A stretch of DNA of 64,000 nt from Takakia lepidozioides (GCA_030704615.1 CM060731.1:79422001-79486000); one strand, 5' to 3'. Shown: positions 23,008 to 47,700, numbered from the stretch's first letter. Numbers and translations are program-made. Notes: a model not told the origin generated them from the letters alone.

Positions 23008-24033
23008 CTACACTGGCAACATGAAAAGAGGAGTGTCCTCCCCGTCAGGAACTGCACTCTTCACAACATGGGGCAGCCCATGTGGAGTAAGGCCTTTCAA
23101 CTCCTTGTCCACCATAGATTGCATTTCAACCCTCTTCTACAAAGCATCCTCCACAGGAAACCAGGCGTTGTCCAGTTGCACATTACAAATGAGCATATAA
23201 ACAAACAGGAGACACGGGTGTAAACATATATAATATAGACAGTTTGCACATGATGGGGTGGTCAAAACTGGTGCATACCTGAACAGCCCCATTTGGACGA
23301 CGGTTCACAAATGTTTGATCGAGGTACAGGTCAATGTAGTGGATAGAAAAGAACCCACACTCCCAAATGGAATCCTGCTGGGGGATAGAAGGTCTCAACC
23401 ATCGGGCTGTGGACGTTGCCCACTTCCATTCAGGTGAAGTTGGGATGAGGCCATGTAGCACAGCCCACATTTTGGCAACATCAGAGCGGAGGCTAGGATC
23501 CGCATGAAAGCTTTTGATGGAGTTCAGATGCAGGTACCTGTGCGCCTCCATAATAAGGACGCTCCAGTGACAACTACACAAACACTTCGTCATTAATATC
23601 ATGCATGCACACATGGGTGGAGAAACAGTGAATGGGACATGGTGGAAAATGGCTTGGGAGGTTAATGAACTTACTCCAAGTACACAGGTATAATTAGAGC
23701 TTCTATGCCAAAGACCGTCTGCGGCCGGAAACGTGCCTTCGTCCATGAAAGAATGGACTCAAGATCACTGCCATGCATCAAACAATGCTCACGTAGTCCA
23801 ATCATCGCAAAGGAATGTAAAGCAAGGTATTTACTTGAAACACATTGAGGGAGAGATAAGCCTTTTGAGGCAATCCAAAAATCAATCATCCTATCACTAG
23901 TCCAACCCCTTGGGTTCAGAAGATCGTCTATATCGTCAAGGCGCAGTGGCACTTGCTTAGGCATGACATTTGTGAAGAACCAGACATCGGTGCTTCTCCT
24001 ACGCATTTCTCCATGTGCTTTCTTGCAAAACAA
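23008..24033 (-). pseudogene. Ulp1/SENP-like (peptidase C48) protease, copy a, multi-exon
   Basis: LRLDDIDDLLNPRGWTSDRMIDFW; HWSVLI..HLNS; PQQDSIWECGFF (His, Gln and Cys motifs; N at the usual Asp position); in-frame stop in the last exon. Confidence 0.75.
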
Positions 24034-27901: not shown

Positions 27902-29640
27902 CTAGAACGGAAGGAGGATATGGGGGTACTCGTCCTCGTCAGGCGCGCCAATTTTGTCCACGTTGGGCAGCCTATGTGGAGTGTGCCCTTTCAACTCCAT
28001 TCCAACCAGACGTTGCATCTCCTGCCTCTTGTGAAGAGCATCTTGTACAGGAAACCACGTCTTGTCGAACTGCGCATTGCAAATAAGCAAAAAACGGTAA
28101 GGAAAGAGGGCTGAAAACATATGAGGCAGCCAAATTGTAGCAGCAGAAATGCAGAGGTCTTACCGGACCCGCCCCATTTGGACGGGGTTGAACAAACGTT
28201 TCATGGAAACACAGGTCAATGTAATGGGTGCAAAAGTAACCACATTCCCAATTCGAAGGCTGTTGGGGCAAAGGCCGCAACCACCGGGCTGAGGAACATT
28301 CCCACTTCCATTCTGGTGATGCAGGGAACAGGCCGCGTAGCACGGCCCACAATTTAGTGACATATTGGTGGAGGTGACGATCCTTATGTGACTTGTGGAC
28401 AGAGTTCAGGTTCTGGAACCTGTGAGCCTCCAGAATAAGCACGCTCCAGTGGGAACTACAAAAAAACTAACAATATGTGAGCATGTAAAAAACATGTATG
28501 TTCAGACATACAAAACGGTAATGGATGGGATAAGGACTTCACATGCGATACACAAAACAGGCAATGGGGATGAAGAGCACTTACTCATAAAAGACGGGCA
28601 CAATAAGAGCATGAATGCCAGAAACCATCAAATTCCGGAAACGTTTCTCCTTCCATGTTCTTATGGACTCACCTGTACTACCATACTTCTTACAATGCTG
28701 TCGAAGTCGCAACCAAGTAGAGGAATGCAAAGCTACATATCTAGACGTTACATGGTGGGGAAGAGATAAGCCCTTCCACGTAATCCAAAAATCTACCATT
28801 CTACAACTAGTCCAACCCCTTGGACGTTGAAGATTATCCATGTCTTCCAGGCGCAAAGGCACCTGCATAGCTGGAAAATTTGTGAGGAACCACACATCAG
28901 TGCTTATGTTGTTGTCTTGTCCATGCCGCCTCCTGCAAACAAATACATTCATGCACGTTAGTATGGAAAACACGGTCACTGTACATGATCCACCCACTGT
29001 GCACACCCCTAAACGACACCATCAGATATAAATGGTATGCCAATATATGCATGAAATCCTTGTATACTGTTTGGTAATACAATCAAGGCTATTGTGCGCC
29101 GACATTTTCATGCCTCCGTCATGTGGACGCGTACTGCCACTGTAACAATTGTGAAGACCCCTCCATCCACCACACATTCCACTTCCCAGTACAAATTTAC
29201 ATGCCTAACATGCACCCATCGTCCAAAATTTTATTGAATGTGAGGCTCCAAATTTAATTGCGCCGGCATGTCCATATGTCGTGTCTCAAGATCGGCAGCC
29301 ACCTACCTGTCAACGTGGGTGCATCCGGCACATGACATGAGTAGGACATGACATTGAGTCCGCATGAGGTGGGCGGGACATGGAGCTATAAGTTGGACAT
29401 TGGTTGTCCCTTTGCTGATGGTCTTGGGGGGGGTGGGGATGATGTGCTGTCACTCTCGGGGGAAGAGATATCGGTTGTCTCTCGGGGGAAGAGATTGCGG
29501 GAGTCTCTCGATGGAAGAGACTGCGCCTGTCTCTTGGGCACATCAGCAGCAGTTGTCATTCTCGGACGCACCGGATTGGGCACTATATGAGCATCAATGC
29601 ATGATGAGCATCCCACACCTCTCATTTGGGTTTGCTGCAC
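27902..29640 (-). pseudogene. Ulp1/SENP-like protease, copy b, multi-exon
   Basis: LRLEDMDNLQRPRGWTSCRMVDFW; HW..LILE..NLNS; PQQPSNWECGYF; same exon layout and last exon as copy a; 5' extent approximate. Confidence 0.75.
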
Positions 29641-29926
29641 CCATGCACTTTCCCGTCTGCTCTTCCCTTCTGCTGCAGGTTTTTAGTTTTTGCTCTTGCT
29701 TGTGCTCCGGAGTATTTGGTTTTCATTGTGCCCTTCTTTCCCTTCTGGTACATGCTTTTGATATTTCTTCTCTGCAGCACCTACTTTTCCCTCACCCAGT
29801 TCTGTCGTTGTGCAGCCGAGTTTTTTTGTCTTTGAATCACTATACATTTTTTTCTCTTATTTCTGCTCATAAGACATTCCATTACACATACCGTTATTTC
29901 ATTACTTCCGCCATCCCCATCTGACA

Positions 29927-30364
29927 ATGGACTCTGAGGCCCTTGTGAGCTCAATCATCGAGAAAGGCCTTATTGCTTGCTACGCGTTGCCTTGCGACGA
30001 CATCAGAGTTAATGTTTTGCGCCACATTCAGAGCTATGAAGGGTAGGACAAAGTTTGGATATACAGAGGGGACAAGGGCGTTCGAACCATGGTCGTTGAG
30101 CTGGGGGAGCTGGAGCACGTGTACACGATGGATGAGGAGGAGCAGATCGCCGTCATCCTCCTGCATGTGCTACTGGGGGAGGTGGACAGGCTTGTCTTCC
30201 GCACATACAAATCAATGGGGCAGAGGTATGAGGGCATGTATATCAAGCATGGGGAGCACATTTTCATGGACGCTCCGTGGATGCAGGCCATAATTCAAAG
30301 AATTCCCCCTTCGAAGAGGCATATCGTGCAAGTAGATTCGTCTGCAGTGTATGGTGCAGAGTAG
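29927..30364 (+). pseudogene. Small unknown ORF (~145 codons, one internal TAG), divergent from Ulp1-b
   Basis: MDSEALVSSIIEKGLIACY..YEG*DKVW..MVVELGELEH.. in one frame. Confidence 0.4.
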
Positions 30365-30939
30365 GCGTGGACTTTGCTGTCCATAGACACCAGATTGGGT
30401 CATTTTTTGACTCTGTAGGTGTTTGGTCTTTCATAGTAATTCGAGACAATGTGGACAAGTCATAATCCAAGCAACTCTGTGTAAAGAGAAGTTTCAGATT
30501 ACATGCGGAATGTTTGAGCATGGAATGTAATCTTTCCTATAAATGCACCTAAATGAAACGTTGGAAATGGATTTCCATGTATGGTGTTTGTGTTGTTGTT
30601 TGTGTGCTGTTTTCAACCAATGTACTTGATTCAGAACTGCTTGAGGTCTGCTGCCACTTCATGTGGTCTTACTGGCAAGTTATTGCCTTCATTTTAGTTG
30701 GCATATGGCTCATTAGTCTTATCCGCAAGAACACCAATTATTTGGTCTTCTGGGGAAGGCGATCACCCTATAGAAATGGCAGAGGTTGAGGACTGAGAGG
30801 AAGTTGAGAGGGGTGCGATGGGCATCTTGGAGAACGACGAAAGGTACATAATGCTGCTACAATGCTCAGGTTCGGGGAATTTTCTGGTAAAAATAGTACC
30901 AGGTAAAATACTGCCACTTAAGCAGCCACGTCGCCGACA

Positions 30940-31900
30940 CGGTGGCGGTGGCAAATACATTTTGAAAATTAACAAAATGAACGCGACCGCCAATTATGGC
31001 GGTCGCTTTGTTTTCGAAATTAAAAAAGAAATAGCGACCGTCATATTTGGCGGTCACTTCAATTTATTTAAAAAAAAAAGCAAGATTGGCGGTCGCACTG
31101 GCGGTCGCTTTATTTTCGAATTAAAAAAAGAAATAGCGACCGTTATCTTGGCGGTCGCTTCAATTTATTTTTAAAAAAAAACAAGATTGGCGGTCGCCTA
31201 ATTTAAAAAAAGAAAACAAGCGACTGCCGTATTGGCGGTCGCACAATTTTGTAAATATGTACAGAACAAGCGACTGCTATATGGCGGTCGGATAATTTCA
31301 AAAATATATTAAAAAAACAATGACCGCCATTGGGCGGTCGTTTAATTTAAAAAATATATAGAAAAACAAACGACCGCCATATGGCGGTCAGTAAATTTAA
31401 AATTATATAAATAAAACAAGCGACATATGAAAATAAAAGCGACCGCCACACCGGTGGTCGCCTGTTTTAAAACAGTACAATATTTGTGATCATCAAACCG
31501 GCGGTCGCGTCAATTTTAAAATATATATTAAGCTTAAGCGACCGTCAGCCTGGAGGTCGCTTAAACTTGAAAATATAAAGATTAAAAACGACCGCCTTAC
31601 TGGCGGTCACGTTTTTTTTTAAATATTAAAAATAAAAGCGACCACCATATTGGCGGTCGCTTTATTTTAAATATATTAGCAAATGAAGCGACCGCCATAC
31701 CGGCAGTCGCATTATATTTTGAAATTTAAAACAATAGCGACTGCCATACGGGCGGTCGCTTAAATTTAAAAATATACAAAATAGAAGTGACCGCAATATT
31801 GCACAAAATGAAAGGAAATAAAAGCGACCGCAGTAGTGGCGGTCGCTTGTTTTTCATAAAAAAAATATAAATAGCGACCGTAGTATTAGCGGTCGCTTAA
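30940..31900. repeat. Array 1 of palindromic GCGACCGCC-N(3-7)-GGCGGTCGC units with AT-rich spacers, ~50-bp period
   Basis: About 19 full or half units, e.g. at 31220, 31270, 31321, 31370, 31538, 31588, 31638, 31688, 31737. Confidence 0.92.
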
Positions 31901-32299
31901 TTTCAAAATTATAACAAATATGGTTGTACAGCATTTTTCTGGTGTGCGCTATTGGTTCGTCATTTATTCATTTCACTTTCATTTCACTTTCATCCTTCTT
32001 GGATCATATATAAGGGATGAGGGTCACCAAACTCCTCACTTCTTTTGACGTAAACACTTGAGATTGCTTTGGATGTTCTCTTCCATTGAACGAGAGTGTA
32101 GCCCAAGAGGAGAATGCGCACATTTTCCCGTTGTGGCTTCCACCAAAGCTACTTCAGCAGATTGTGTATAAGCTCAACACTACAATCCACATCGATCCAC
32201 TTGGGTTGCTGATAGGTGTAGAAATGTTGGGCTATCGCATTGCACTCTATATTCACAACATATTCATTTATAGGTGACTGTTTTTTGTTGCTTACATCG

Positions 32300-34000
32300 C
32301 TAGGGCCCAGGGGAGTGGATATTGGGTGAAGATGAGGGAGGAATGGAGCCCTTGGTATACGACGGTCCCGAACACTGTCAGTGCCACTGGTAGTGTTGAG
32401 TGCAACCTATGTGGATTAAAGCTTTATTATCGTAAGAATCGGTTGCTCGCTCACCTCGGCTATAAAGGTGTGAAGAGCATCGGGGTGGGTTTATGCCCTA
32501 AAACATTTATGCGGGTAAAAAACCACTTTGCCCAGTGTGGAAGCAATATTCCAATGTCTTTGGATCTAGACATGACCTCTGAGTAGGACACTCCATCTTC
32601 CCGTCAGGATGCCCCGATTAGTACCAAGGGCGACTCTTGTGAGGCTTTGGGTGTCCTTGGACAAGTGGGTTGTGCCGAAGCAATACCTGCTTCAACACCT
32701 CTTTGTACCCCTACTCTTCAACGGAGTAGAGGATTACGGCAGCAATCCATGTAGGAAGGTCTTAACTTGTCTTCGAAAAGACAGTTGGATAAAAAATGGG
32801 CGCAATTTTTCTTCGATGCCAACATACCATTTAATGTGGCAAAGCGACATTTATTTCTGTCGTTAGAGCAACCTCGTCATAGTAAAGAAAACTGGAAAAT
32901 GGCAGGTGAGAGAGAAAGAGCTCAATATGTTGCCACATGAATGGTGGGATCTGATTGGAGCTGAAGCAAGAACATTGGCTTCCATTGCGAAGCGTATTCT
33001 TGCTCAAGTGTGCTCTTCCTCATTTTGCGAACGCAATTGGAGCAGTTACTCATTTGTTCACAACAAGATTCGCAATACGTTGAATCCCGCGAGGGTTGAC
33101 AAATTGGTGTATGTATATACCAATTGCCGACTGCTACGTGAGAGAGCAGCGGATGATGCTACAGCATGGTATGAGAGGAATTTGCATTCCGAATAGTCTG
33201 CTTCTGAGGTAGATTTGATGAGTGACGATACTGAGCCTCAGAGAGAATCATCTGCCGATGATAGTGAAGATGGATCCGATGATGCTCCCGAAAATGCGTA
33301 TGATCCGTTTACATTCACAGAGGAAGATGCTTATATCCAGTCGACCTTTGATGACCTACTTGAAGAAATGCGTATCGTAGATGAAGGTGAAGCTGCAATT
33401 GTGTCATCCCCAGACCCTCAAAATGAAGTTGGGGTCGACCCTCGCCCCCCACTACATGCTGAAGCCACCGGTAGTGCCCCAATGGAGCTTAGGGGTGATG
33501 AACTTCCAGGACCGAACGACGTACGCAACCCTGTTCATACAAACAATGGTGTCGAACCCATTGTACAGTCAACGGGACGGGATCATGCCTCACCGATACG
33601 ACCAGGTCCATCACAATGTCAAAACCGATCCAGCTCCCCATCAACACAACGGGCATTAAGGAACAACATGGTTGATCTGTTTTCCACACGCACGCATCAT
33701 TCTGCTGCATTGGACCGAGCGGAAGTTGAAGCCTTGGATGATGACAATCTGCCACTACAATTCCACCTTAACCGACGATGTGTTGCGCAACAAACCCGTG
33801 GTTCCTCACATGCCGGACCATCTAATGCCGGTCCATCTCGGGCAGACCCCCCTCCGGTACCTCCTTCAAGACCACCTTTGATTGCGTCCCAAGTCCATAA
33901 ACGACAGAGAACAGTCCAACCTTTTGTAAGCGATCGGCCCACAAACAGGCCAGATACCGTGGATGATATTCAAGACCGGAGTGGGAGTCGACCTTAGAGA
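32300..34000 (+). pseudogene. hAT transposase, internally deleted (BED-type finger, DUF659-adjacent region, C-terminal dimerisation domain, acidic tail)
   Basis: VECNLC..RLLAHLG..GLCPK; FFFDANIPFNVA; PHEWWDLIG..AKRILAQVCSSSFCERNWS..HNKIRNTL..KLVYVYTN. Confidence 0.85.
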
Positions 34001-34459
34001 GAACTAAATGTGGTTCGAGGTCGCTTGCAGATTCAAAGGCCCGGACATATGAGGTCGGATAGGGAGGGCGATTCCAGCACTGATTATGGCAATGGTGGTG
34101 AAGTCGAGGGTGACCTGGATTTTCAACCCATCGGAGCATTAGGATTAGGATCTTCTTTGTCCCGCCGTCGAAGCAGTAGAAGGAATTGAAGCAAAACAGC
34201 TATAGGCATGCATCAGCACATTTTAGTAGACATGTTTATATTTCTGTAGTGAAGTAATACCAGTGTGATCATTGTCACTATGAGTATTTGTATTGATGTT
34301 GTGTATGTGTTGGAAAATAAAAGATGTTGCCCATGTGTATACCAGCCAAAATGTCGCCCAAAGGCATCGTCACTTGCTCATGTTTGTGTTCGATGATTTG
34401 CTTGTGGAATGGAAATCAATTGTGCCATGCTTCCAACTCTGCATTCATTTTTATTTTAA

Positions 34460-35340
34460 TGCAACGACCGACATCACTGGCGGTCGCATTTGTTTTTCTT
34501 CTTTGTAAATACCGTGAACACGATGTAATAACGATCGTCTTTTGTTTCTTCGTAAAATTACTGGTGGTCGCTTTAATTTCTGTTTTAAAAAAAAAATCCA
34601 ACGACCGCCAATAGTTGCGGTCGGTTGTTTTTTTAATTTTAAAAAATGAATCGACCGTCATATTTTGCAGTTGTTTTTTTGGGATTTTTAAATGGAGCGA
34701 CCGCCAAGGTGGCGGTCGCTTCTACGAAGTGTGCCCTGCGCATGGAACGAGGAATGAGGCGGGGGGAGGGGGGCATATAAGCTCGGACTCATTCTCCCCT
34801 CATTTCCATTTCAGGTGGTCGTTTGAAGTTTTTTTTTGTTTTTATAAATGCAGCGACCGCCATTACTGGCGGTCGTTTTTTTTTTTTTTTTTGCGAAATG
34901 GAGCGACCGCCATTTGTGGCAGTCATTTTTTTTTGTTTTTAAATGGAGCGACCGCCAAGGTGGCGGTTGCTTCTACGAGGTCTGCCCTGCGCGTGGAGTG
35001 AAGAATGAAGGGGGGGGGGGGCATATAAGCTCCCAGTCATTCTCCCCTCACTTGCATTACTGGCAATTTTTGTTTTTATAAAATGCAGCGACCGCCATTT
35101 CTGGAGGTCGCTGTAATGGTTATTTTTTTAAATGCAGCGACCGCCATTATTGGCGGCGGTCGTTTTTTATTTATTTAAATGGAGTGACCACGAAGGTGGC
35201 GGTCGCTTCTACGAGGTCTGTCCTGCGCGTGGAGCGAGGAATGAGGGGGGGATATACACGGCGGTCGCTTTACTTTATTTACTTTACTTTTATTTTAATT
35301 ATTTTGGAAATGAAGCGACCACCGTTACTGGCGGTCGCTT
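34460..35340. repeat. Array 2 of the same palindromic motif, with a ~245-bp higher-order triplication
   Basis: Units at 34602, 34697, 34853, 34903, 34948, 35088, 35137, 35184, 35315; ttctacga.gt.tg.cctgcgc.tgga..gaatga.ggggg three times. Confidence 0.9.
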
Positions 35341-35483
35341 TTTTGTTTTTTGGAGGAAAATTTATTCTACAAAATTAACTTTTAAGAACTATTTTGACAT
35401 CTACTCAAACTCGTTTAGGATGAAGGGTTTAGAGTTACGTCTTATTAGTAAACCTCGTTTAGTGTTGCTCCGATTGTTGCAGA

Positions 35484-37816
35484 ATGGCAGAGGGCTAGGA
35501 CGATGACCGTCATGGAAGAGATGACCCCAATGAACATGGACCGCCCCCTAAGAAAATCAAAGGGTCAAGGCAAGACTTGAATTGGTATATGGTGACCCTA
35601 GCATACTAACAGAAGAGGGCTGGGAGGATGTTCCAGAAGAATTCAGGTGGCCGATGGCGAAATGTAAAAAATTCGTGAAATGGTACCACATCAATCGATT
35701 GTGGCCTTTGGATAGGCATGACGTGCAAACCGGAAACAATTACGCAGAGTCCAGATCTTGCACGAACTTGCATTTCCAGCATAGAGCGAATGAGGTGCAT
35801 TGCACATTGTGGGGTCAACCTCTCTTAAAGGGCCAAATCCCGTACACCTTGGCAGCCATATTGTACGTGGAGGTCATACTCTTGTGTCCAGTGAATTGAC
35901 AAACTGCTAGTAGGAGGAACGCAAGGTTGTTATATGATTTGGAGTACATCCCGGACACGTTCGGAATACAACCGGCTGCAACGTTAGAGGAACCACTGGC
36001 GGAAAGAGACCAGCGAATCAGGACCCTGCAGGACCGACTAGATTGGCAAACATTGCGTATAGCCGAGTTGGAAGCTAGATTGCAAGACATGCGTCCAAAC
36101 AATGAAAGCACTGTTGTCCACAATGAGGATCGAACAAACGTCGTGGACATGGACGCGGAGTTTGTGATGCCCGATCGCAGTATTGACCTCATCATTCACG
36201 AAATTACGGACGTCCTTGACCCTGTGGCCGATGAAACCATGGTTGAGGAACAGCGAATTGCGGATGAGAGAATGATGAAAGGAAAAGAACCAGTACTGGA
36301 AACCGGGGAATGCTCGAGGGTCGCCATTCAATCCGAGATGTACCCGATATTAGATGTCGACCGCGTTACAAAAGAGCGGGACATTGCTATGGCAACTGCA
36401 TGGCGCTTGTCCAAAACGCTGGAGATTCGGGCATGGGTCCCATTGAATGGCGATTGAGAGAATTAGATACAATGGGCGATCCATTTGACCTCCAGAGAAG
36501 CACGGGTAGAGCGGGCACTGTCAGGCTTGCAACGTGTCGCATGCATGTCGAACCGTAGCGTGGATAGCATTTATGCCAACATGCAAAGATATAACAATCT
36601 CCGCATCGCATCAAGCGTGTTCGCCGGGTATACCAATTGGGCAGATGTGGATTCTATGTTCGATCGATATGAGCACAGAATTTTGGGGTCAAACAGAAGC
36701 ATAAACTGGGAATTGGAGATAGAAGAAGAGTGGGACACCACAATAAAGATGACCAACCTCATAAAACCGGCCCAGAGAGAAGAGATACCACGAGGCGTTT
36801 TGCCGTCATGGATATCAGATGACACAGTTTGTTCGATGTGTAGGAATCCATACGGCCCAGAGGGACGTCATGTGTTTGGATCATGTGGACATATGTTCCA
36901 TCTCACATGTCTTATCCCACAAGCCTTGCGGATGAGCGCTTGCCCAGAATGTCGTGCATCAATCCATCGCCGTTTCTAGGAGCTGGTGGGCTTTGGAAGA
37001 ACGGATGCCCATAGGTTTTGAATACAATCGACACAACCTCCCATTGGATGGGCTACTATTCACATTTCTGAATTGTGTGCATTGGGGCAAGAACTTGGTA
37101 TAGGATGTAGACATAGAGATGCATGGCATACATGCCGGAAACCCGATATACATAAAAGATCCCCAGTATTTCTGGATCACATCTGACTGGGAGATAACCA
37201 TACGTGCGGGAGACATTCGAGATTGGTGGGAGAGATAGCAGTTTTGCCGCAATTTGGGAGGGCATTTGAGTCAAAGAAGGTCCAGGTTTATCCGGCTCCC
37301 ACAGGTTCCATGGGTGCCGGAGGAGAACGAATTGTATGACCAACAACCGATTGGGAGACGTTTGTTGCTGTCCAAACTGGAAGATGCTATAATATATCAA
37401 CTCCGAATGAATGAGGCGTACAAGGTGGCTTATCGTTGAAACAACACAATGATTAGGGACAGGGCCCGCGAGAGGCAGTTGGAAAGTTTCAAAGTACTAT
37501 CAAGGCAGTATAGAGAAATGGAGGCGATTATGGACAGATCGTTATCATCGTGTTTCGGGGCTCTATTGCCGGATGTGGACGGCCTCGTTGCCGATTAGCA
37601 TGCAGCCTGAGCACTTGTTCTTGATCCACCTCCGCCACATCGTGAGAGTGAAGAAGAAAGTCAACTTTCGCCGCGAAGTAGGCGGATGCAGGCCATAATT
37701 GATCACATGCCATTGGGCCCCTAATTGACCATGAGATCGCGGTCGCAAGCTCTAGCAATTGGCAGTGCAAATCAGGCCACAACATCAAAATCCTTGTCCT
37801 CGGACAGTGACGACTA
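35484..37816 (+). pseudogene. RING-H2 finger / coiled-coil protein, disrupted by stops and frameshifts
   Basis: CSMC..(x14)..CGHMFHLTC..(x10)..CPEC = C3H2C3; coiled coil RDQRIRTLQDRL..IAELEARLQ. Confidence 0.75.
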
Positions 37817-38260
37817 GGCTTTTAATGACTGGCAGCGTAGTACATATACAATGTGCATTTTTGTTGTACCTTGAATATTGTTGGAAAACACAGTGATGGC
37901 ATTCCGCCAATTTTGTATATCACCAATTTTGTTAATACACAATGCACATGTGCGGCACCTGCCAATTTCAATTGCATAAGCAGCGTTTTCTTCACATTTA
38001 CACTCGTGTGATGAGGAAGAAGTAGTTCACCCTGTAAACAAATTTACAATGGTGTCATATTTGGTCATGACGTGTATGTGGGTATTTGCAATGAACTCCG
38101 AAAACTGGAGAACAAGGAAAATTGATGTTAATCAATAAGTTATAACGAGTTACGAACGGTCATCTTCCAAACAAATTTCGCCTGGTATTTCATAATCATT
38201 TCGCAAAATCTATGATCTTTCTACGAACATACCCACAAAGTTCTCAAAGCACAAAATAAT

Positions 38261-38662
38261 TTCAATTAATCTCATATTACACTGGGACGTATCAGAAGGT
38301 GCATTGAACATACTGGCCAAGTCTCAAAGCGAACGAAAATCATTTGGATGGGCAACCATCCGTTGGCCTATTGAACAAATTTTGATTGATCTCATATTAC
38401 TTTGGGGCCTCTTACATGGCACATTGAACATAGTGGCCAAGTCTCAAAGCGAACCAAAATCATTTCGATGGCCAACCATCCGTTGAGCCATCGAATGAAT
38501 TTGGATTGATCTCATATTAGTCTAGGACCTGATATATGGTATGTTGAACATAGTGGCAAAGATTGAAAGCAAACAAAAATCATTCAGATGGGCAACCATT
38601 CAATCACCTATTGAATGAATGGGGTTTTGTCTTCGATTATACTGGGACCTGTTACATGGTAT
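38261..38662. repeat. 120-bp tandem repeat x~3.3
   Basis: ctcatatta at 38271, 38391 and 38511; ttgaacata.tggc.aa in each unit. Confidence 0.9.
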
Positions 38663-38674
38663 GCCCTTTGAAGC

Positions 38675-40257
38675 TCTTTTTGTAGTGTCTCTTGCCTCGT
38701 AATGCGGTGCTTATTCATGTCCACTTTATCTAATATGTTGATATTCTCCATTTGGAACAGATCCACACATGTGTGTAGAAATCCTTAAATAAGCAAATGA
38801 CCATCTCCACTTTTATAAGCCTCATCCCCAGCTTCCAGTTTTGATGGTCATTTGGTTTTTTAAATCTTTATATACGCATGTGTGGATATGTTCCAGATGG
38901 AAGATATTAACATTGGAAAAATAAGAGTTGGAGAAGCACCTCATTACGAAGCAAGAGACATTACAGAAGACCTCAGCATGTTGAACATCTGGATGAAGAA
39001 CCTTGCCCATCGTCGCTTCAAAATTCAAGCGCTTCTGAAATGATCACATTTTTGTTGGTGGAAGCAGATCGCCACATTGATCTCGTACCCATCGAAGACT
39101 CTCGTAGGCCACATGGAACGGTTCATGTGATACATTTTCACAAATGCGATGTGATACATTTGTAAAATGGTATCACATCAACCGTTTAATGTGGCCAATG
39201 CACCTCTTCTACACCATGGCGGAAATGTTCGCCACTTGAAAGCACAAACACAAATACTCCGTGCAAACAATCTCAAGAATCATATGTATTGCAAGGTGTT
39301 TCATACTGCCCATGTTCATGTAGTTGAATTCTTTAGGAATCGTTTTGCTACTCCCATGCCAATAACATCAGGTCCACTGCGACTGCCATATTCTGAATTC
39401 CGTATCAGCAACCACGGACATGAAACCAGGAACTTCGCACAAAATTATCTCCAATTCATTCAATTTATGGTGGGCCATGGCTGCAGCCTGCAAGCTGGCC
39501 AGGGTGGCTGATACGTTCGTTTGAACATGACAGTCTCAGAGGACGTTAGCATGGGAATAGCAAAAAGAGTATTACAGAATTCAGCTAGAGGAACAACAAT
39601 AGCATGAAACACCTTACCGTAAATATGATTGTTGACATTGACAGCTCTAATCAATAGAGAACTCGCATCATTAGTTGTGCTCGAGCAGCACTACCGGTCC
39701 CCTGAGTAAGTAAATTTCTGTTGTAAATAATAAATTGCATACGCTCGAACCTCACAGATGTCATTGCAACAAAACCGGCTGTGTATTGTGGCACTGTTTG
39801 TAACTTCGAATGTTTCAATGTTTCTGACAGGGTACTGAGAAAATGATATATTGGCTCCATAGGAGTTAGACAACAAACATTCCATATCTCGTTCAAATGT
39901 CGACACTACCATGAGTGACATGGATCAAAAAGTAATAGGTGTACATGCGACCTCCGGACGTTCAAGTAGACCATTCGCTGGACCTAGTATCAAACGTTCG
40001 GAGTTCGCATGTGCACTTATTACTTTCTGATCCATGCCTCTCATGGTAGTGTCGCACAGTTGAATGAGATGTGAGATGTTTGTTGTCTAACTCCTACGAA
40101 ATTAATACATCGTTTTCTCATAACCCTATCCGAAAGCTTGGAACATTACAAATATAAACAGTGAGCCAGTACACAAACCATTTATGTTACGATGACAGGT
40201 GCCAGGGTCGAGCATATGCAATGTAGTATTTACAATGAGACTTTATTTATTACATGC
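38675..40257. repeat. Four consecutive imperfect inverted repeats (38675-38970; 39107-39196; 39255-39650; 39700-40257)
   Basis: Arms paired by eye, e.g. tgtagtgtctcttgcctcgtaatg / cattacgaagcaagagacattaca; ggccacatggaacggttcatgtgatac / gtatcacatcaaccgtttaatgtggcc; cgacactaccatgag / ctcatggtagtgtcg. Confidence 0.85.
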
Positions 40258-40332
40258 ACGATCAAAATTGATTTATGTCTTCATAAAAGAACCATTGTAC
40301 TGCCACAAATCTCATATCTACGAGACTATGGT

Positions 40333-41780
40333 CTACTCCGTCCTATATATGTCTTTCGGCTCAGGCCAATTGAATGGCTTGCTCATGAGCCGAAGTACTA
40401 CATGGGCTAATGTGACTCTCTCATTCTTATTGTTGTCGTACAACCTTTGTAGCATTGAATGCCAACAACCTCCCGTAAATTGGTTCTCGAACATACTTTG
40501 ATCATAATGAGCGCCGCTATTTATTCGTACCGCTATTTTCCCAACGGCAAAGGTCTCCGACGTCATGTCCTTGGGGGGGGGTGGCATTCGCATTGAAAAC
40601 TGATGCAATATCTTTTTCCACCCACTATTTTTTTGGCGAATTCCCGGTCCAGCTTGTCTTGGTTTTCAAACTGGTACGACGAGGCTTTGCGTATGCCCAA
40701 TGGGATGGCTAAGCCCCAATCACACACCCCAATCTTGATCTCCTCGGTGCCATCTGGAAAATGCAACAAGATGTTGTCGGGGGACAAGTCGTTGTGCATG
40801 ACACCGTTCTTGTGGACAACATCCATGATGCACACCAGTGCCCATGTAAGTTTACTGCGCACTTTCCAGAAACGAAGCAAGTGATCGCATTCCTGGAACT
40901 CTGCTTCCGTTCCCTTTTGTTCCAAAATCACCCTGTTGTCCGAATCGTTGCCCCATTTTCAGTCAAGGTTCATCATGTCGCGTATTGTCCCCCCATTCTA
41001 CCAGCGAGTATAACCCTCTACCTCACGTGCATTCACAACAAAATATAAGATAACACCCGGGTGCTGGAACTTCACTGCCAAACACTCCTCGTTATGTTGT
41101 CTCAACACCTTTTCTGGATTTTTGGACTTGGGTTTTTTTCCCGCTAGTTCCCAAGGCTCCGGTATTCTAGAATCGCCAACAATCCTATACTGACGGACCT
41201 TAGCATACACTCCTTATTTGTAAGGGCCAATATCTACCACCTTCGCAGTAGAGTTCAGGTAATAAAGACCAGTTGTGCCTCCCCCGCCCGATGACCCCGC
41301 CTTCCAAGGGACAACCCTAGTCCGGCGATGTGAATTCTGACTTGCCGAGCAAGCCCAATACTCAACACGCCGCATTAACTCAGCTTCGGCGGAGGGCACT
41401 CGACCCTCGGTTGCTCTACTCTTCCATGTCTTCATTAGCTGCCTCAAATTCCACGTGGCGTCTTTCGCCCTGCTTTGAATCCACCGATTGAACTTCGGCT
41501 TGTCCCTGTCCGCCGTCCACTTAGCCCCCGCCAAAGCGTTTGTCATTTTCCTCTCCATTTTTTGTTGGAAAATCTGAAACCCCTCCCATCCATGCCTGAC
41601 ATAAGCACTCTCCGGCCTCATCATGTCCCTACCCTTGAAATAATCCACTACCACTTCTTTCACCCTATCCAAGGCATCTGGTCCCGGGTAGTCTGGATTG
41701 TTGACCTGGCTATCCCGCTCGTGGGCACGTTTTCTCTTCCTCCGACCCCCAGACGACCCCGCCCCAGAACTTGAATTCAC
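40333..41780 (-). pseudogene. Protein kinase (atypical HNDLSPDN catalytic loop, DWG), disrupted
   Basis: IGPYK*GVYAKV (Gly loop), LAGKK, HNEECLAV, VMHNDLSPDNILL, IGVCDWGLA; basic NLS-like RRKRKR at the N-terminus. Confidence 0.85.
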
Positions 41781-42279
41781 AACCCCTGAGATTGTATAAA
41801 CCTTTGCCCACTACAGGGTCCAAAACCTCAGAAAACGGCAATGAACGCGTGTGGATGGTGTCTTCGTAGTTTTCTGCAAAAAAACAGCCCGCCGGAGATC
41901 CGAAAACGGCAAAATGGTGATACGATGATTGAACCGCGAACAAGTATGTGGGACTGACCAATAGAAAATCGACAAACCCACCCCCCCCCCCCCCGGCCCA
42001 AATAATCACCTTTGCACCTCCCGTTGACAGTGCCAAGCAACGAATTCCGAAAGGACTACTTGATGCTAAGGAACCGCACCACGAGAGGGGCAAAAGTGAT
42101 CAGAAAAGGAGGGGGGAATGGTTTATATAGGGTTCAAAACCACCTTCCCCCATCCCATTTGTTTCGTTTTTCCTGACCCGTGGCACCTCGCCACGTGGCT
42201 GGCCAGGCGCCGCTTCATGATTAAAAAATTAAAAACAAAACGCCACACGGCGGGTCCCTGGATTTCTAAGGAAAAAAAA

Positions 42280-42950
42280 ACACGCGACCGCCGCATAACG
42301 GTCGCTATATTTATAAAAACAAGAAGAGCGACCGCCACATGGCGGTCGTTGTTTTTATAAAAAAAAATTTAAATAAGCGACCGCCTACTGGCCTACTCGC
42401 TTAATTCAAGATTCAAAATATAAATAAGCGACCGCCACTAAATGACGGTCGCTTCATTTAAAAATATATATTAAGTAAGCGACTGCCAAACGGGGGTCGC
42501 TTAATTTAAGAATCAAAATCAAATCGAGCGACCGCCTCCAAATGGCGGTCGCTGTATTCTTTATTGACAAAAATAGCGACGGCCGCCAAATGGCGGTCGC
42601 TGCATTTTTCAAAAATTAACTGAAGAAGCGACCGCCAAACGGCGGTCGCTTTATTTAAGAATAAAATTAAAAGTAAACGACCGCTGCTAAATGGCGGTCG
42701 CTAAATTTAAAATATATATATAGCGATCGCCACATGGCGGTAGATGTATTTTTACAGAATATATCAAAGATATAATAATAATAATATAATAAAGTGCGAG
42801 CGACCGCCAATCTGGGCGGTCGCTTCATTTAAAACATAATAAACTTCACCCGACCGCCAATATAGGCGGTCGCTTATTTTAAAATATAATACAGTACAAT
42901 TTATTTTAAAAATAATAAATTATATGCGACCGCCAATATAGGCGGACATT
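42280..42950. repeat. Array 3 of the palindromic motif, ~50-bp period
   Basis: About 13 units, e.g. 42328, 42377, 42428, 42479, 42528, 42576, 42628, 42677. Confidence 0.92.
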
Positions 42951-43449
42951 TTTTTTAAAGAATTAATAAATATTAATAATTGGCCACGTTTGTTTGATAC
43001 CGTGGCTGCCATGTCATTACAAAGGGTAGAAGTAAATCGTATAAGTCAAATGTAAAAAACATTACATGGATAAACGTCCAGATTCGACGTGATGGCCAAC
43101 GTGTCAGCGCCACGTCACGTCAGGAATGATAACTAGGTTCCATGGGACTGTGCCATCGAGAAATTGAAATGTCATCTCCAGACTACGAATTTATGCGAGT
43201 TGCATGGAGAAGCGCAACTATCTGGTGTTGAACAGAAGTGCAGGGCCAAAATCCCGCGCAGTCCTTCTTTGCGAGGGCATGAGGATGGTGAGGAGCTTAT
43301 AAGTCCCTCAGCCTTAGCCCATTGATAAACCAAGTCTTCTGTAGATCTTCATGTGGCACATCTGTTAACTGTTTAATTAACAGACCCATTTTCTTGAAGT
43401 ACTTTTCTACTGACTCATGTTTCTTCTGCCTTAACTGTTGAAGGCCACT

Positions 43450-43619
43450 GACAACCAAGTTGTAGCCTAGTGGTAATGGGCACATACCACCTCGGAAGTG
43501 GTTGTGGGTTCAATCCACCCTTGGTGTCACAAAGGTGTCCACCTTCTTAGCGGAAGGCAGTAGCCCTTCGGGGTGAAGTGACTCCATAAGTTACGCTTCC
43601 TATGAGAGGCGTCATACTT
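43450..43619 (+). mobile_element. tRNA-derived SINE (170 bp) with 12-bp TSD
   Basis: A box TAGCCTAGTGG, B box GGTTCAATCC; TSD TTGAAGGCCACT at 43438-43449 and 43620-43631; removing it restores gag. Confidence 0.85.
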
Positions 43620-44795: not shown

Positions 44796-47700
44796 TGTAA
44801 CACCCAGGATCTACGCAGACTATAATTGAAGTGTTTGTCAACTTTTTCCCAAAACACTCGATGTCTTCTAGGCTTTCATTGCAGGTTTATATAGCCTTCA
44901 CAATATGATTATTTTAAAGGTTTGACTTGAGAGCATCAAATCAAAACTTCCTGAAGTCAACATTCTTAGGTTTGACATATTCTCCACAATATGACTTTCT
45001 CAAACATTTGACCTACTCTTCATAATATGAATATCTTATAGGATTGACTTGAGAGCCTCAAGTCAAACTTCCTTAAGTCAAACTTCTGAGGAACCTTCCT
45101 AATTATTTTGAAAACTTCTAGGGAACTTTCTTCCTCCATCTAGAACCTTCTAGATTCTATCATGTTACAATCCTCTCCTCTTTCAAGAAGTAACGTCCTC
45201 GTTGTTCGAATTTTCAAAAGCTTGAATTGTCAATTGAGCATTTGTGAGATTTTTCACCGGTTCCCACGTAGCTTCATGTAATGGAAATCATTTCCAGAAA
45301 ACCAAATATTCCAACGCATCATGTCGCCCTCGTTTGTATGTGCGTTTTTTTAGAACACGGTCGACCTCCAACTCTTCATTTTCGTCTATCAACTCTGGTA
45401 AAGGTTGCGGTTCTTGAGTATCTTTGAATATTGATGGTCGAGGTTCGTAACGACGTAGTAGAGAAACGTGAAACACCAGGTGGATCTTCATTTGTGGTGG
45501 TAACTCCAGCTTGTATGCTACTGCTCCAATACGTTTAATGATCGAAAAAAGACCAATGAACAGTGCCCCTAGTTTTCACGATCCAATGATGTGTAAGTTG
45601 ATTGTAGACAACCACACTTGATCCCCGACTGCAAACTCCTCATCCCATCGATGTGCATTTGCATACTGCTTTTGGCGATTTTGGGCAACCATCAGCTTCT
45701 CTTTAGTTTGACGTATTCCCCGTCGAATTTGTTGTACAAATGCGTTAGTTGCGGTTACCTTGGATAACTCTTGAACTTTGTAAGAGTTGTTGGCACATTT
45801 GGATGTTCGCCATACATTAAAAAGAAATGAGTCTCTTTGGTTGACACATTGACCGAATTATTGTCGGGGATCCAAAGCTTACCTTCCTAGAAAAACAACC
45901 CTCGAACTTTAGTCACTTTGTCCTTCTTCTTAGCGTCCACGATGTCCCCATCCTCTTTAGAAGCTTTCGCTATCTTGTTCCACCAATCGGGTTGAATGTT
46001 GACCTCTGTCAATGAGTTTATGCGCGGCATCATTGTCATTGCATCCGCTAATTGTCGTTTCCCCTCCACGTAGATAATCTTCATGTTAAACTGTTGTCGT
46101 CACTCCGCCCAACGAATTTGTCTCTTCGATAGATCTTTCTGTGTCTCCAAGTACACCAACGGTTTATGGTCTGTCTTCACTATGAACTCTTTGTCTCCAA
46201 GATAATGCCTCCAATGTTTTGTGGCCAAAACAATAACCAATTTTTCTCGCTCAGTTGTATGGTAATTCTGTTCCGCAGGTAATAATTTACGAGAAAATTA
46301 TGTCACTAGGTGTCATCCGTCTTCCCGTTCCTGTTGTAACACCCTACCCACTGTTGAGTCTGACGCATCTACCGAGAGCTTGATTGGTCTTGTCGTATCA
46401 TACCATTTCAAGATCGGAGCATGAAGCAACGCATCTTTCAAGGCCTAAAATGTTAACTCATCTTCTGTAGCCCACTTCCATCTAATTCAAAAGATTTGTC
46501 AATGGTTGGGCGATCTTTGAGAATGCTCGTACAAATCGTCTGTAGAATCCGGTAAAGCCAAAAAAACTCCTTAATTGGGTGATGTCTTCAGGTGCTATCC
46601 ACTGCTGAATAGCTTCTATTTTATCACTCATCACCTCAATTCCCTTCTTACTCATGCGATGCCCCAAATAATCTACTTCTTGTTTTCCAAACTCACATTT
46701 AGATGTTTTGGCATATAGCTGATTCTCACGGAGAACTTGTAGTACTTGTTTGAGGTGGTTTCTATATTCGACAAGGCTGTTACTGTAGATCAAAATATCA
46801 TCTAAAAAGACTATCACAAATCTATCTAAGAATGGGTGGAAGATATCATTCATGAGATCCATGAATGTGGCTGGGGCATTTGTGAGACGAAATGACATAA
46901 CCATGTATGCAAAATATCCATACCTAGTGCGGAAGGCGGTCTTATATACATCTTCATCGGCGACTCGAATTTGGTTGTATTTACTCCTCAAATCAAGCTT
47001 CGTAAAGTATTTTGCTCCTCGCAGTTCGTCAAATAAATCGTCCATGCGTGGTAATGGGTATCTATTCTTCACTGTCTGCTGCTTGAGTGCTCGATAATCA
47101 ATGCATATCCGCATTGCTCCATCATTTTTCTTCACAGACAACATCGGCGCTCCATACGGGGACACACTTGGTCTTATAAAGCCATTTGATAGTAGGTCCT
47201 CGACTTGAGCCTTACATTCTTCCAATTCGTTTGGTGCTAATTAATAAGGGACTTTACAAGAAGGAGTACTACTTGGAACAACCTCAATCTCATGATCTAC
47301 TCTTCTCTTTGGCGGAAACCGTGCTGGTAGGTCATCTGGAAATACATCTTTGAACTCTTTCAATACACTCTGTAATTCTATAGGGACCTCACTCATGTTT
47401 TTTTATAGATTTTCCACGTCTCTTATTAAACCTACAAATAATAAGTCTTTCTTATATGTGGCTGTAGTACCTATAACAAACGATGGTAGGTTTCGATATG
47501 GCGTCCTCACTCAATCTCCCCATATTTTCCAATTCTGGGTTTTGACTATCTTTCGATGCCAATCAACATGGGGTTGTGAGATTCCATCCAAGGCATGCCT
47601 AATATTACGTCATATCTAGCTAGTCTGACCACTCACCATTCTAAGGTTTCTCTATATTTACCGACCGTCAACTCTGTGCTTTTAGGTAGTGTCTCAATGG

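What the first reader, a model, noticed from the sequence alone, without database searches (positions are those of the whole stretch)
30900..43000. Candidate cargo-carrying hAT element: transposase + RING-H2 + protein kinase, each headed by the same palindromic motif array
Seen: three arrays of one inverted-pair motif (GCGACCGCC-N-GGCGGTCGC). Each lies immediately 5' of a gene: array 1 before the hAT transposase (+), array 2 before the RING-H2 gene (+), array 3 before the kinase (-). Arrays of this motif occur nowhere else in the window, tying the three genes into one ~12-kb unit. Known: hAT transposases bind repeated subterminal motifs, and Arabidopsis VANDAL elements amplify short motif arrays upstream of their genes as targets of the VANC anti-silencing protein. 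Inference: a mobile unit encoding its own ubiquitin ligase and kinase, co-regulated or de-silenced by an element-encoded dimeric DNA binder. TIRs and an 8-bp TSD were not identified.
Basis: partly seen in the sequence, partly recalled or inferred. Interest (0 to 1): 0.85.

Follow-up and report, generated by a model that had tools for sequence, protein, structure and literature searches.

The report
hAT transposon carrying kinase and RING genes
This 12-kb stretch is a dead copy of an abundant plant "cut-and-paste" transposon whose intact relatives always carry, besides their transposase, a protein kinase and a RING ubiquitin-ligase-like gene, each switched on from behind an array of a short DNA motif that is private to each transposon lineage.

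Summary
GCGACCGCC occurs 38 times against 0.16 expected, all in three arrays (30983-31896, 34464-35338, 42284-42940). Each array lies 5' of a TATA box and one gene.

The unit is real and mobile. Contigs from this organism pile up several hundred-fold starting at 30866. Distant relatives (moss Ceratodon purpureus and four metagenome lineages) keep hAT transposase, RING protein and kinase linked. Every gene there is headed by an array of a lineage-private motif. Two lineages show identical 13-bp TIRs (CAGGGTTGTCTAT); two copies of one of them have 8-bp target duplications (7/8 each).

The window copy (30866-43137) is defunct:
- about 40 bp with the left TIR are missing;
- the transposase core is deleted at about 32915-32920;
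- the RING and kinase genes carry stops and frameshifts;
- C>T decay is evident.

The binder of the arrays is not identified. The arrays diverge while the TIRs stay fixed, which points to a VANC/TnpA-like regulatory or anti-silencing role rather than end recognition (inferred).

I found no description of such a hAT family in the library searched. Other first-stage notes in this genome (s1-447858, s1-447868) appear to have flagged further copies.

The parts
30866..43137 (.). Defective copy of the hAT-kinase-RING transposon (12,272 bp). About 40 bp including the left TIR are missing. The right end is probable to within a few bases.
   Evidence: Summed contig depth rises from about 50-170 to 4,000-60,000 at 30866, and a consensus loose end there shows that other copies continue leftwards. 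The right end is set by register with the relatives' ends.
30866..30982 (+). Left subterminal region with CGTCACG/GTGGC-type short motifs; the terminal inverted repeat itself is lost.
   Evidence: The family consensus preceding 30866 is AGACCTGACGCTGACGGGACCTCCGTCACG, and it is absent anywhere in the window.
30983..31896 (.). Array 1: about 15-18 inverted-pair units at about 50-bp spacing.
32007..32013 (+). TATA box of the transposase gene.
32278..32583 (+). BED-like N-terminal exon of the transposase.
   Evidence: No Pfam hit. It is homologous to the BED exons of L005 (E 2.7e-6) and L008 (E 3.7e-7). The L005 exon has a weak zf-BED hit, E 0.01.
32755..32937 (+). Start of the DUF659 (RNase-H-like core) region. 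The rest of the core, about 385 aa, is deleted at about 32915-32920.
   Evidence: 66% identical to L002 hAT residues 44-78. Loose ends at 32885/32915 (before) and 32920 (behind) show that other copies carry extra sequence here.
32867..33193 (+). hAT C-terminal dimerisation domain.
   Evidence: Pfam PF05699, E 3.5e-9. 65% identical to the L002 hAT.
33197..33994 (+). Acidic, low-complexity C-terminal tail of the transposase, in frame after one stop.
   Evidence: A similar acidic, low-complexity tail follows the hATC domain in the L002 and L005 proteins.
34464..35338 (.). Array 2, inverted relative to arrays 1 and 3. It holds 8 clear units and three copies of a 245-bp unit, each with a TATA-like box.
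35552..37436 (+). RING-protein pseudogene: conserved N-terminal helical domain (35552-35896), coiled-coil part, RING-H2 finger (ORF 36467-36976) and C-terminal pieces. It has at least 2 in-frame stops and 1 frameshift.
   Evidence: Pfam RING, E 1e-6. Four pieces match the 1000-aa Ceratodon protein L004:18330-21329. Frames.
38258..40257 (.). Internal non-coding block: 120-bp tandem repeat (38258-38663) and four foldbacks (38675-40257).
   Evidence: L005 has analogous internal repeats and inverted arrays at 7570-8615.
40336..41810 (-). Atypical protein-kinase pseudogene, colinear with the 450-650-aa intronless relatives. The catalytic motifs ELAGK, HNDLSPDN and CDWG are still readable. It is broken by in-frame stops and one frameshift.
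   Evidence: Pfam Pkinase, E 1.2e-7. Frames. Four colinear matches to L002, L004, L005 and L008 kinases. Alignment A1.
42123..42129 (-). TATA box of the kinase gene, with a G-box-like GCCACGTGGC about 60 bp upstream.
42284..42940 (.). Array 3: about 12 units, same orientation as array 1.
43118..43137 (-). Probable right terminal inverted repeat. Read on the minus strand it is CCTAGTTATCATTC followed by CTGACG.
   Evidence: It has the same register as the relatives (14 nt, then CTG(A/T)CGTGACG), and is unique in the window.

Best explanation
Window 30866-43137 is a dead, non-autonomous copy of a high-copy hAT-superfamily DNA transposon.

Shown:
- Autonomous members of this family group are 14-15 kb long, with short CAGGG-type TIRs; 8-bp target-site duplications were seen at the two copies where both flanks could be read.
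- They carry three conserved intronless genes, or four where the RING gene is duplicated: a BED/DUF659/hATC transposase of about 1000-1100 aa, a RING-H2 protein of about 700-1000 aa with a conserved helical N-terminal domain, and an atypical protein kinase of about 450-650 aa with an intact catalytic signature.
- Every gene has its own TATA promoter. Directly upstream of that promoter lies an array of 7-30 copies of one short GC-rich, CpG-containing motif.
- The motif is the same for all genes of one element but differs between lineages, while the TIRs stay the same.

Inferred:
- The arrays are cognate sites for an element-encoded sequence-specific factor that switches on, or keeps unmethylated, all genes of its own family at once. 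This would work like VANC on VANDAL repeats, TnpA on Spm, or a transposase acting as activator.
- The nuclear kinase and RING ligase act on host proteins, plausibly silencing or chromatin factors, or on the transposase itself, to favour transposition.

In this window copy the system is switched off for good. The left TIR is lost, the transposase core is deleted, the RING and kinase genes are pseudogenes, and there is heavy C>T decay.
For: Arrays. Enrichment and position were confirmed.

High copy number and left boundary. 6,969 contigs of run X1 were laid on 29500-35499. Summed depth jumps several hundred-fold at 30866, where a consensus loose end sits.

Decay of the window copy:
- The window has T or A where the family has C or G (T>C 73 and A>G 72, against C>T 28 and G>A 29).
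- Deletion loose ends lie at 32885-32920.
- The reading frames are broken.

Conserved linkage:
- L005, L006 and L007 are three copies 90-93.5% alike over 14.3 kb, holding RING, kinase and hAT with three arrays (L006 lacks its left end and first array).
- L008 is a complete 15.09-kb element with four intact genes and four arrays.
- L002 has an array, the kinase and a convergent hAT gene.
- Ceratodon L004 has a TIR-like end, an array with the kinase, and an array with the RING gene.

hAT hallmarks:
- DUF659 plus hATC domains.
- TIR CAGGGTTGTCTAT in L005-L009.
- 8-bp TSDs matching 7/8 in L005 and L007.

Mobility in a named species. At least 126 near-identical kinase sequences (nearly all 491 aa in the 15 listed) lie on chromosomes 1, 2, 3, 4, 12, U and V of two Ceratodon assemblies.

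Accessory genes look functional:
- The kinase Lys, HNDxxxxN and DWG motifs are near-invariant.
- dN/dS between copies is 0.43-0.54 for the kinase and 0.64 for the transposase.
- The RING finger is kept in all lineages.

Promoter position. A TATA box lies 13-155 bp behind the array in 10 of 14 array-gene pairs; an 11th pair (the L004 RING fragment) has its only TATA match about 350 bp away.

Regulatory rather than end-recognition role. L005 and L008 share an identical TIR but have unrelated array motifs, and internal genes have arrays too.
Against: - No protein has been shown to bind the arrays.
- The only recognisable DNA-binding domain is the weak BED finger of the transposase.
- No RNA run holds the locus, so neither promoter activity nor co-regulation is shown.
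- Gene order differs between lineages. The RING gene lies between hAT and kinase here, but at the far end in L005 and L008.
- The window's right end rests on register and resemblance only (8 of 15 bases shared with the relatives' TIR).
- The left end is absent, so no TSD can be read in this genome.
- The L008 flanks do not form a TSD; it is a short-read metagenome contig that may mix copies.
- Another first-stage note (s1-447858) places kinase-foldbacks-gene-hAT next to a MULE transposase, and a MULE/SWIM remnant lies 10 kb to the right here. An association with MULEs is therefore not excluded.
Confidence: 0.75

Rival explanations
1. The arrays are classical hAT subterminal transposase-binding repeats, like AAACGG in Ac or GTGGC in Hermes. 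They would serve end recognition and synapsis, and their promoter position would be secondary.
For: The two outer arrays lie about 120-270 bp inside the ends, both in the window and in L005 and L008. That hAT transposases bind such repeats through the BED domain is my own knowledge of Ac and Hermes. A recent preprint argues that transposases are intrinsic sequence-specific activators (10.64898/2026.08.24.746577), so both roles could coincide.
Against: - Internal arrays stand in front of internal genes: array 2 here, L005 8873-9264, and L008 3745-3886 and 7468-7701.
- The outer arrays are direct, not mirror-symmetric.
- L005 and L008 keep identical TIRs, similar CGTGAC-type subterminal motifs and a 60%-identical BED exon, yet their array motifs are unrelated.
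Confidence: 0.25
2. The arrays are ordinary promoter-proximal enhancers bound by host transcription factors. They were expanded by slippage, and no element-encoded binder exists.
For: They sit just upstream of TATA boxes. Their unit number varies between copies through gain and loss of units (joints). Host-type G-box-like sequences are also present near the kinase promoter.
Against: The motif is completely different in each lineage, yet identical for all genes within one element. That pattern is expected for co-evolution with a private binder and is hard to explain with conserved host factors.
Confidence: 0.2
3. The 12-kb unit is not an element of its own. It is an internal module of a giant Mutator-like element, the MULE/SWIM transposase at 52978-53954, as proposed for other loci of this genome.
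For: A MULE/SWIM-like ORF lies 10 kb to the right. Note s1-447858 lists MULE transposase, kinase, foldbacks, gene and hAT together elsewhere. Other notes report MULEs with private palindrome arrays in this genome.
Against: - Relatives have their own hAT TIRs, and two copies have 8-bp TSDs enclosing exactly these genes.
- The repeat boundary at 30866 is sharp and the sequence to its left is low-copy.
- A SINE, a complete LTR retrotransposon and unrelated sequence separate the unit from the MULE ORF.
- The motif is absent around the MULE ORF.
Confidence: 0.07
4. The arrays are an independent satellite or MITE that landed three times by chance near unrelated genes.
For: The array units are tandem and AT-rich between motifs, like many satellites.
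Against: Array depth in contigs is equal to or lower than that of the intervening genes. The same gene-array architecture recurs in five other lineages with different motifs.
Confidence: 0.02

Closest known systems
hAT superfamily DNA transposons (Ac/Ds, Tam3, Tag1, Hermes); specifically the plant BED + DUF659 + hATC group
   Same: The hATC dimerisation domain is present here. In relatives there are also the DUF659 core and a BED-like finger, 13-14-bp TIRs beginning CAGGG (as in Ac), 8-bp TSDs, and short subterminal repeats. The window copy is an internally deleted, Ds-like derivative.
   Different: Autonomous members are 14-15 kb and carry two or three further conserved genes (kinase, and one or two RING proteins), each with its own promoter. 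Known hAT elements, to my knowledge, encode only the transposase. Long motif arrays stand in front of every gene, including internal ones. The nearest annotated seed-plant and fern proteins (Glycine, Pinus, orchids, Ceratopteris) are only 26-29% identical.
VANDAL (Mutator-like) elements with VANC anti-silencing protein and its tandem-repeat targets (Hosaka 2017, PMC5735166; Sasaki 2023, PMC10398659)
   Same: Multi-gene DNA transposon. Short motifs are amplified as tandem repeats in the non-coding regions. The motifs differ sharply between related elements, which suggests a private recognition system.
   Different: The superfamily is different (hAT, not MULE). No VANC/DUF1985-like protein was detected by Pfam. 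The accessory genes are a kinase and a RING protein, not VANB/VANC. Loss of methylation was not tested.
En/Spm (CACTA) TnpA and its subterminal 12-bp motif arrays; transposases as sequence-specific activators (bioRxiv 10.64898/2026.08.24.746577)
   Same: An element-encoded factor binds repeated motifs near the ends and promoter, partly as inverted dimers, and controls the element's own transcription and methylation.
   Different: Here each of three or four genes has its own array. No TnpA-like protein is recognisable, and the binder is unknown.
Cargo-carrying DNA transposons (Pack-MULEs, Ulp1-carrying KI-MULEs/VANDALs, gene-capturing CACTA and Helitrons)
   Same: Non-transposase genes travel inside a class II element.
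   Different: The kinase and RING genes are not recent host fragments. They are full-length, intronless, under constraint, and kept together with the transposase across lineages whose proteins are 26-50% identical.

Membership tests
hAT superfamily transposon | hAT C-terminal dimerisation domain (PF05699) in the transposase | tested here: met
   Window 32906-33196, E 3.5e-9. Relatives.
hAT superfamily transposon | RNase-H-like DDE catalytic core (DUF659 region in this plant group) | tested here: not met
   In the window copy only the first ~60 codons remain (32755-32937); the core is deleted at about 32915-32920. The core is present and intact in relatives: L002 DUF659 E 4.7e-42, also L005 and L008. 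The window copy is therefore a non-autonomous member.
hAT superfamily transposon | N-terminal BED zinc finger | tested here: inconclusive
   The window exon 32278-32583 has no Pfam hit. It is homologous to the L005 and L008 N-terminal exons. The L005 exon has a sub-threshold zf-BED hit, E 0.01.
hAT superfamily transposon | 8-bp target-site duplication | tested here: inconclusive
   It cannot be read in the window because the left end is missing. In relatives: L005 GGTCAGAG/GGTTAGAG and L007 CCAAAGAC/CCAAATAC, 7/8 each. The L008 flanks do not match.
hAT superfamily transposon | Short terminal inverted repeats of (C/T)AG-type | tested here: inconclusive
   Relatives carry CAGGGTTGTCTAT at both ends in L007 and L008 (L005's right end has one mismatch) and at one end in L006 and L009. 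In the window only a probable right TIR is present, at 43118-43137.
VANDAL/VANC-type anti-silencing system | Mutator-like (VANA) transposase | tested here: not met
   The transposase is hAT-type.
VANDAL/VANC-type anti-silencing system | VANC-family (DUF1985) protein encoded by the element | tested here: not met
   No such Pfam hit in any ORF of the window unit or of L005, L007 and L008. The RING-protein N-terminal domain has no fold match.
VANDAL/VANC-type anti-silencing system | Tandem arrays of a short motif in non-coding regions that differ between related elements | tested here: met
   Five different private motifs in six lineages, each confined to arrays 5' of the element's genes.
VANDAL/VANC-type anti-silencing system | Binding of the element protein to the motif and sequence-specific loss of DNA methylation | not testable with these tools
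   This needs ChIP, DAP-seq or EMSA, plus bisulfite data.
Eukaryotic protein kinase superfamily (the cargo kinase) | Catalytic Lys (beta3), catalytic loop HxD-x4-N, Mg-binding DxG | tested here: met
   FAGK Lys, HNDLSPxN and CDWG are near-invariant in alignment A1 and still readable in the window pieces. Pfam Pkinase E 1.2e-7 to 2.5e-15. Activity was not assayed.
RING-H2 E3 ligase (the cargo RING protein) | C3H2C3 zinc-binding pattern | tested here: met
   Window ORF 36467-36976 has the pattern C-x2-C...C-x-H-x2-H-x2-C...C-x2-C. Pfam zf-RING_5/zf-RING_2/zf-rbx1. Same in L004, L007 and L008. Ligase activity was not assayed.

The most novel reading that the evidence does not exclude
A deep-branching group of plant hAT transposons, found in mosses and in this plant, has kept for a very long time its own kinase and RING E3 ligase as a counter-defence pair. 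The pair would phosphorylate and/or ubiquitinate host silencing or chromatin proteins. The group also has fast-evolving self-recognition motif arrays in front of every gene, bound by one of the element's own proteins. That would be a second, independently evolved VANC-like anti-silencing system, and the first in which a transposon brings post-translational-modification enzymes of its own.
Probability: 0.3. Interest if true: 0.85.

Novelty: new variant of a known kind. Interest (0 to 1): 0.7.

Why it matters
Class II transposons are usually thought to need only a transposase. The few known accessory proteins (VANC, TnpA, Ulp1-like VANB) have been informative about how transposons fight host silencing.

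Here a hAT lineage keeps a catalytically intact kinase and a RING-H2 protein across lineages whose proteins are only 26-50% identical. It also places a lineage-private motif array in front of each gene. Three consequences follow:
- It gives a clean, testable case of transposon self-recognition outside the Mutator superfamily.
- It points to transposon-encoded phosphorylation and ubiquitination as a possible way to manipulate the host.
- It explains part of the hAT load of a moss genome. Ceratodon carries at least 126 near-identical kinase copies, and its U and V chromosomes are reported to be hAT-enriched (PMC8245031).

Intact, apparently young copies exist (L008, L005-L007, Ceratodon), so experiments are feasible in a transformable moss.

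Tried and rejected
- **TIR/TSD candidate inside the window.** A scan gave TSD GCCACGTC at 30925-32 and 43109-16, with TIRs GCCGACACGGTGGC and GCTGACACGTTGGC (expected by chance about 0.008). I rejected it because family similarity starts 67 bp further left, at 30866, with a consensus beyond that. The match reflects inverted subterminal motifs.
- **108-bp inverted repeat as MULE TIRs.** The repeat at 43443-43546 and 56724-56831 consists of two tRNA-derived SINE copies.
- **Search for the lost left end elsewhere in the window.** None found.
- **Pfam on the MULE-like ORFs at 50-54 kb.** No hits. Only the Atlas feature search suggested Mutator/SWIM.
- **RING-protein N-terminal domain.** Its residues 40-150 were modelled with pLDDT 80-94. 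Pfam, the Atlas feature search, Foldseek against PDB and the Atlas shape search gave no credible match; the best was TM 0.44 to an ATHILA-ORF-like cluster.
- **RNA evidence.** No RNA run holds the locus.
- **Literature.** Five word searches found no description of a hAT element with kinase and RING genes. This is absence in the searched library only; Repbase was not available.
- **Helical phasing of array periods.** I considered periods of 11, 20-21 and about 50 bp and dropped the idea, because 50 bp is not an integral number of helical turns.

Full report
**1. Observation**

The nonamer GCGACCGCC occurs 38 times on both strands of the 64-kb window, against 0.16 expected. All matches fall in three clusters. 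With one mismatch allowed, the clusters hold 30, 18 and 21 half-sites, and only 8 scattered singletons lie elsewhere.

The half-sites form about 35 inverted pairs, GCGACCGCC-N4-7-GGCGGTCGC, repeated every ~50 bp and separated by AT-rich spacers. Many variant half-sites differ by C>T or G>A.

Outside the motif the arrays are only ~70% alike. Arrays 1 and 3 are in direct orientation and array 2 is inverted.

Each array is followed by a TATA box and a gene:
- 32007 (+), before the BED-like/hAT gene;
- three TATA-like boxes inside a 245-bp higher-order repeat of array 2, before the RING gene;
- 42129 (-), before the kinase gene.

**2. The genes in the window are wrecks**

Transposase:
- Pfam finds the hAT dimerisation domain at 32906-33196 (E 3.5e-9), a RING finger at 36485-36979 and a kinase fragment at 40563-40931.
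- The 'transposase' consists of a BED-like exon (32278-32583), the first ~60 codons of DUF659 (32755-32937), the hATC domain and an acidic tail.
- About 385 residues of catalytic core are missing.

RING gene (35552-37436): one frame carries at least two in-frame stops and then a frameshift.

Kinase gene (41810-40336, minus strand): it shows the same kind of damage.

**3. The unit is a high-copy repeat in this organism**

I laid Logan contigs from three runs of the same organism and from one plant metagenome on 29500-35499.
- Thousands of contigs at 88-99% likeness were placed (6,969 for X1).
- Summed depth rises from about 50-170 left of 30700 to 4,000-60,000 right of 30866. The tool warns that this is not a copy number, but the step is several hundred-fold and sharp.
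- At 30866 the other copies continue leftwards with a shared consensus (AGACCTGACGCTGACGGGACCTCCGTCACG, agreement 0.8-0.93). The window copy has therefore lost its left tip.
- Loose ends at 32885/32915 (before) and 32920 (behind) show that most other copies hold sequence where the window copy has the core deletion.
- The window copy has T or A where the family has C or G far more often than the reverse (73+72 against 28+29). This is the signature of deamination of methylated cytosines.
- The arrays are not more abundant than the genes, and many joints inside arrays show gain and loss of units between copies (all).
- A Logan contig from another run holds a 95% copy of the kinase 5' part joined to LTR-retrotransposon sequence.

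**4. The three genes travel together elsewhere**

The kinase piece has only 307 hits at E<1e-3 among 1.8 billion representatives. It belongs to a small atypical family of ~450-650-aa proteins. Fetching their contigs gave the following.

*L002* (10.9 kb). A 20-bp motif array is followed 13 bp later by a TATA box and then the kinase. This gene converges on a BED/DUF659/hATC gene that is 65% identical to the window's hATC domain.

*L005, L006 and L007.* These are three copies from one long-read metagenome assembly, 90-93.5% alike over 14.3 kb.
- They carry a RING-protein homologue, the kinase and hAT.
- Three arrays of a ~21-bp motif (GGGGAACGGGGTCGGACTGG) each stand 5' of one gene; L006 lacks its left end and first array.

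*L008.* This is a complete 15.09-kb element.
- It has four intact genes: RING1, kinase, RING2 and a 1,106-aa transposase including the BED part.
- Four arrays of an 11-bp motif (GCGGGCTGG(T/C)C) stand one before each gene.

*L004* (Ceratodon purpureus, chromosome V).
- A TIR-like end is followed by an array and the kinase.
- Further arrays precede a RING fragment and a 1000-aa RING protein.
- That protein matches the window's 35552-37436 in four colinear pieces.

The Ceratodon kinase cluster has at least 126 near-identical sequences (nearly all 491 aa in the 15 listed). They lie on chromosomes 1, 2, 3, 4, 12, U and V of two assemblies.

**5. It is a hAT transposon**

- Aligning L005, L006 and L007 gives sharp ends: CAGGGTTGTCTAT... 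on the left and its reverse complement on the right.
- 8-bp flanking duplications are present: GGTCAGAG/GGTTAGAG in L005 and CCAAAGAC/CCAAATAC in L007.
- The same 13-mer ends L008 (84 and 15177) and one end of L009.
- The transposases carry DUF659 plus hATC.
- Their nearest annotated relatives outside this group are BED/DUF659 proteins of soybean, pine, orchids and Ceratopteris, at 26-29% identity.
- In all lineages the 14-nt end is followed by CTG(A/T)CGTGACG-type subterminal motifs.
- The window has the same register at 43118-43137: read on the minus strand, CCTAGTTATCATTC then CTGACGTGACG. This sequence is unique in the window.
- The left consensus seen starts with ...AGAC CTGACGCTGACGG.

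I therefore place the window copy at 30866-43137, lacking about 40 bp on the left. The right end is probable, not proven.

**6. What the arrays are likely to do**

Shown:
- Every gene of every element examined has an array of the element's own motif upstream.
- A TATA box lies 13-155 bp behind the array in 10 of 14 array-gene pairs; an 11th pair has one ~350 bp away.
- The motif is confined to these arrays.
- The motif differs completely between lineages (window, L002, L004, L005, L008). Yet L005, L008 and L009 share identical TIRs, and L005 and L008 also share similar subterminal motifs and a 60%-identical BED exon.
- The number of units varies between sister copies.

Inferred:
- The arrays are a fast-evolving regulatory or self-recognition module, not the sites used to recognise transposon ends.
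- The closest precedents are the tandem-repeat targets of VANC in VANDAL elements (PMC5735166, PMC10398659), TnpA sites in Spm, and the recent proposal that transposases are themselves sequence-specific activators (bioRxiv 10.64898/2026.08.24.746577).
- The inverted-pair form of the motif here and in Ceratodon suggests a dimeric binder. In L005 and L008 the motif is a direct repeat.
- The binder is unknown. The BED transposase is the only protein with a recognisable DNA-binding domain.
- The conserved helical N-terminal domain of the RING protein (pLDDT 80-94) has no fold match.

**7. The accessory genes look functional in intact copies**

- The kinase keeps the beta3 Lys (FAGK), HNDLSPxN and CDWG.
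- dN/dS between the L005, L006 and L007 copies is 0.43-0.54 for the kinase and 0.64 for the transposase.
- The RING-H2 pattern is kept in all lineages.
- The kinases (alignment A1) and the RING proteins (alignment A2) carry basic NLS-like stretches near the N-terminus. I read this as nuclear localisation, which is inference.
- What they modify is unknown. Host silencing or chromatin proteins, or the transposase itself, are the obvious candidates.

**8. Rivals**

- An Ac-like end-recognition role for the arrays is possible for the outer arrays. It does not explain the internal arrays, or motif turnover under constant TIRs.
- Host-factor enhancers do not explain lineage-private motifs shared by all genes of one element.
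- A giant-MULE module is suggested by a MULE/SWIM remnant at 52978-53954 and by note s1-447858. However, relatives have their own hAT ends, the left boundary here is sharp, and a SINE and a complete LTR retrotransposon lie between.
- An independent satellite is excluded.

**9. Novelty**

Word searches of the library found no description of a hAT element with kinase and RING genes. The Ceratodon genome paper reports hAT enrichment on the U and V chromosomes but no such gene content. Repbase could not be consulted.

I rate this a new variant of a known kind: a hAT transposon with a conserved kinase/RING accessory set and VANC-like private arrays. The copy in the window itself is an ordinary dead transposon; the interest lies in the family it reveals.

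**10. Limits**

- The organism's name is coded. The relatives other than Ceratodon come from metagenome assemblies of unknown species.

Noticed in passing
window 43443-43546 and 56724-56831: Two inverted copies (88% alike) of a tRNA-derived SINE, with A-box and B-box-like TAGCCTAGTGGTAA ... GGTTCAATCCACC. At first sight they mimic TIRs around the MULE region.
   Followed up: partly
window 44796-49984: Complete Ty3-type LTR retrotransposon. Its 376-bp LTRs are 94% alike and an RT ORF lies at 46485-47240 (-). It sits between the hAT element and the MULE remnant.
   Followed up: partly
window 52978-53954: C-terminal part of a Mutator/SWIM-type transposase (CxWH, TNxxE and CxC...CxH motifs). It was recognised by the Atlas feature search (0.93-0.94) but by no Pfam model, and no N-terminal catalytic part was found upstream.
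   Followed up: partly
window 23186-24033 and 27975-29021 (minus strand): Two Ulp1-like (Peptidase_C48, sub-threshold) genes, about 68% alike at the DNA level over 1 kb. The stretch 29500-30700, just right of the second copy, is low-copy in the contigs. They are therefore not part of the hAT repeat, contrary to note s1-446383.
   Followed up: partly
window 12158-12711 and 50429-50976: A 554-bp direct repeat, 94% alike, 38 kb apart. One copy abuts the head-to-head LTR element at 4967-12148 and the other lies just right of the LTR retrotransposon at 44796-49984. Its nature was not determined.
   Followed up: no
L001 (Logan SRR327418 contig, 1962 bp): Bases 1-465 are a 95% copy of the kinase gene's 5' part (window 41827-41363). 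Bases 474-1200 match LTR-retrotransposon sequence of window 18593-17868 at 91%. This is either another copy of the element hit by a retrotransposon or a chimeric contig.
   Followed up: partly
L006 17580-19578: A piggyBac-like gene (DDE_Tnp_1_7) lies 1.5 kb outside the right end of the hAT element in one metagenome copy, so there is a neighbouring transposon of another superfamily.
   Followed up: no
window 38258-40257; L005 7570-8615: Both the window element and L005 hold, between the RING and kinase genes, a block of tandem repeats flanked by inverted short-unit arrays and foldbacks. The sequences are unrelated but the position is analogous. Function unknown.
   Followed up: no
L008 982-3375 and 8147-10321: This lineage carries two paralogous RING-protein genes, each with its own array. 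The Ceratodon locus L004 has a full gene plus an inverted N-terminal fragment (14002-13637) that also has an array.
   Followed up: partly
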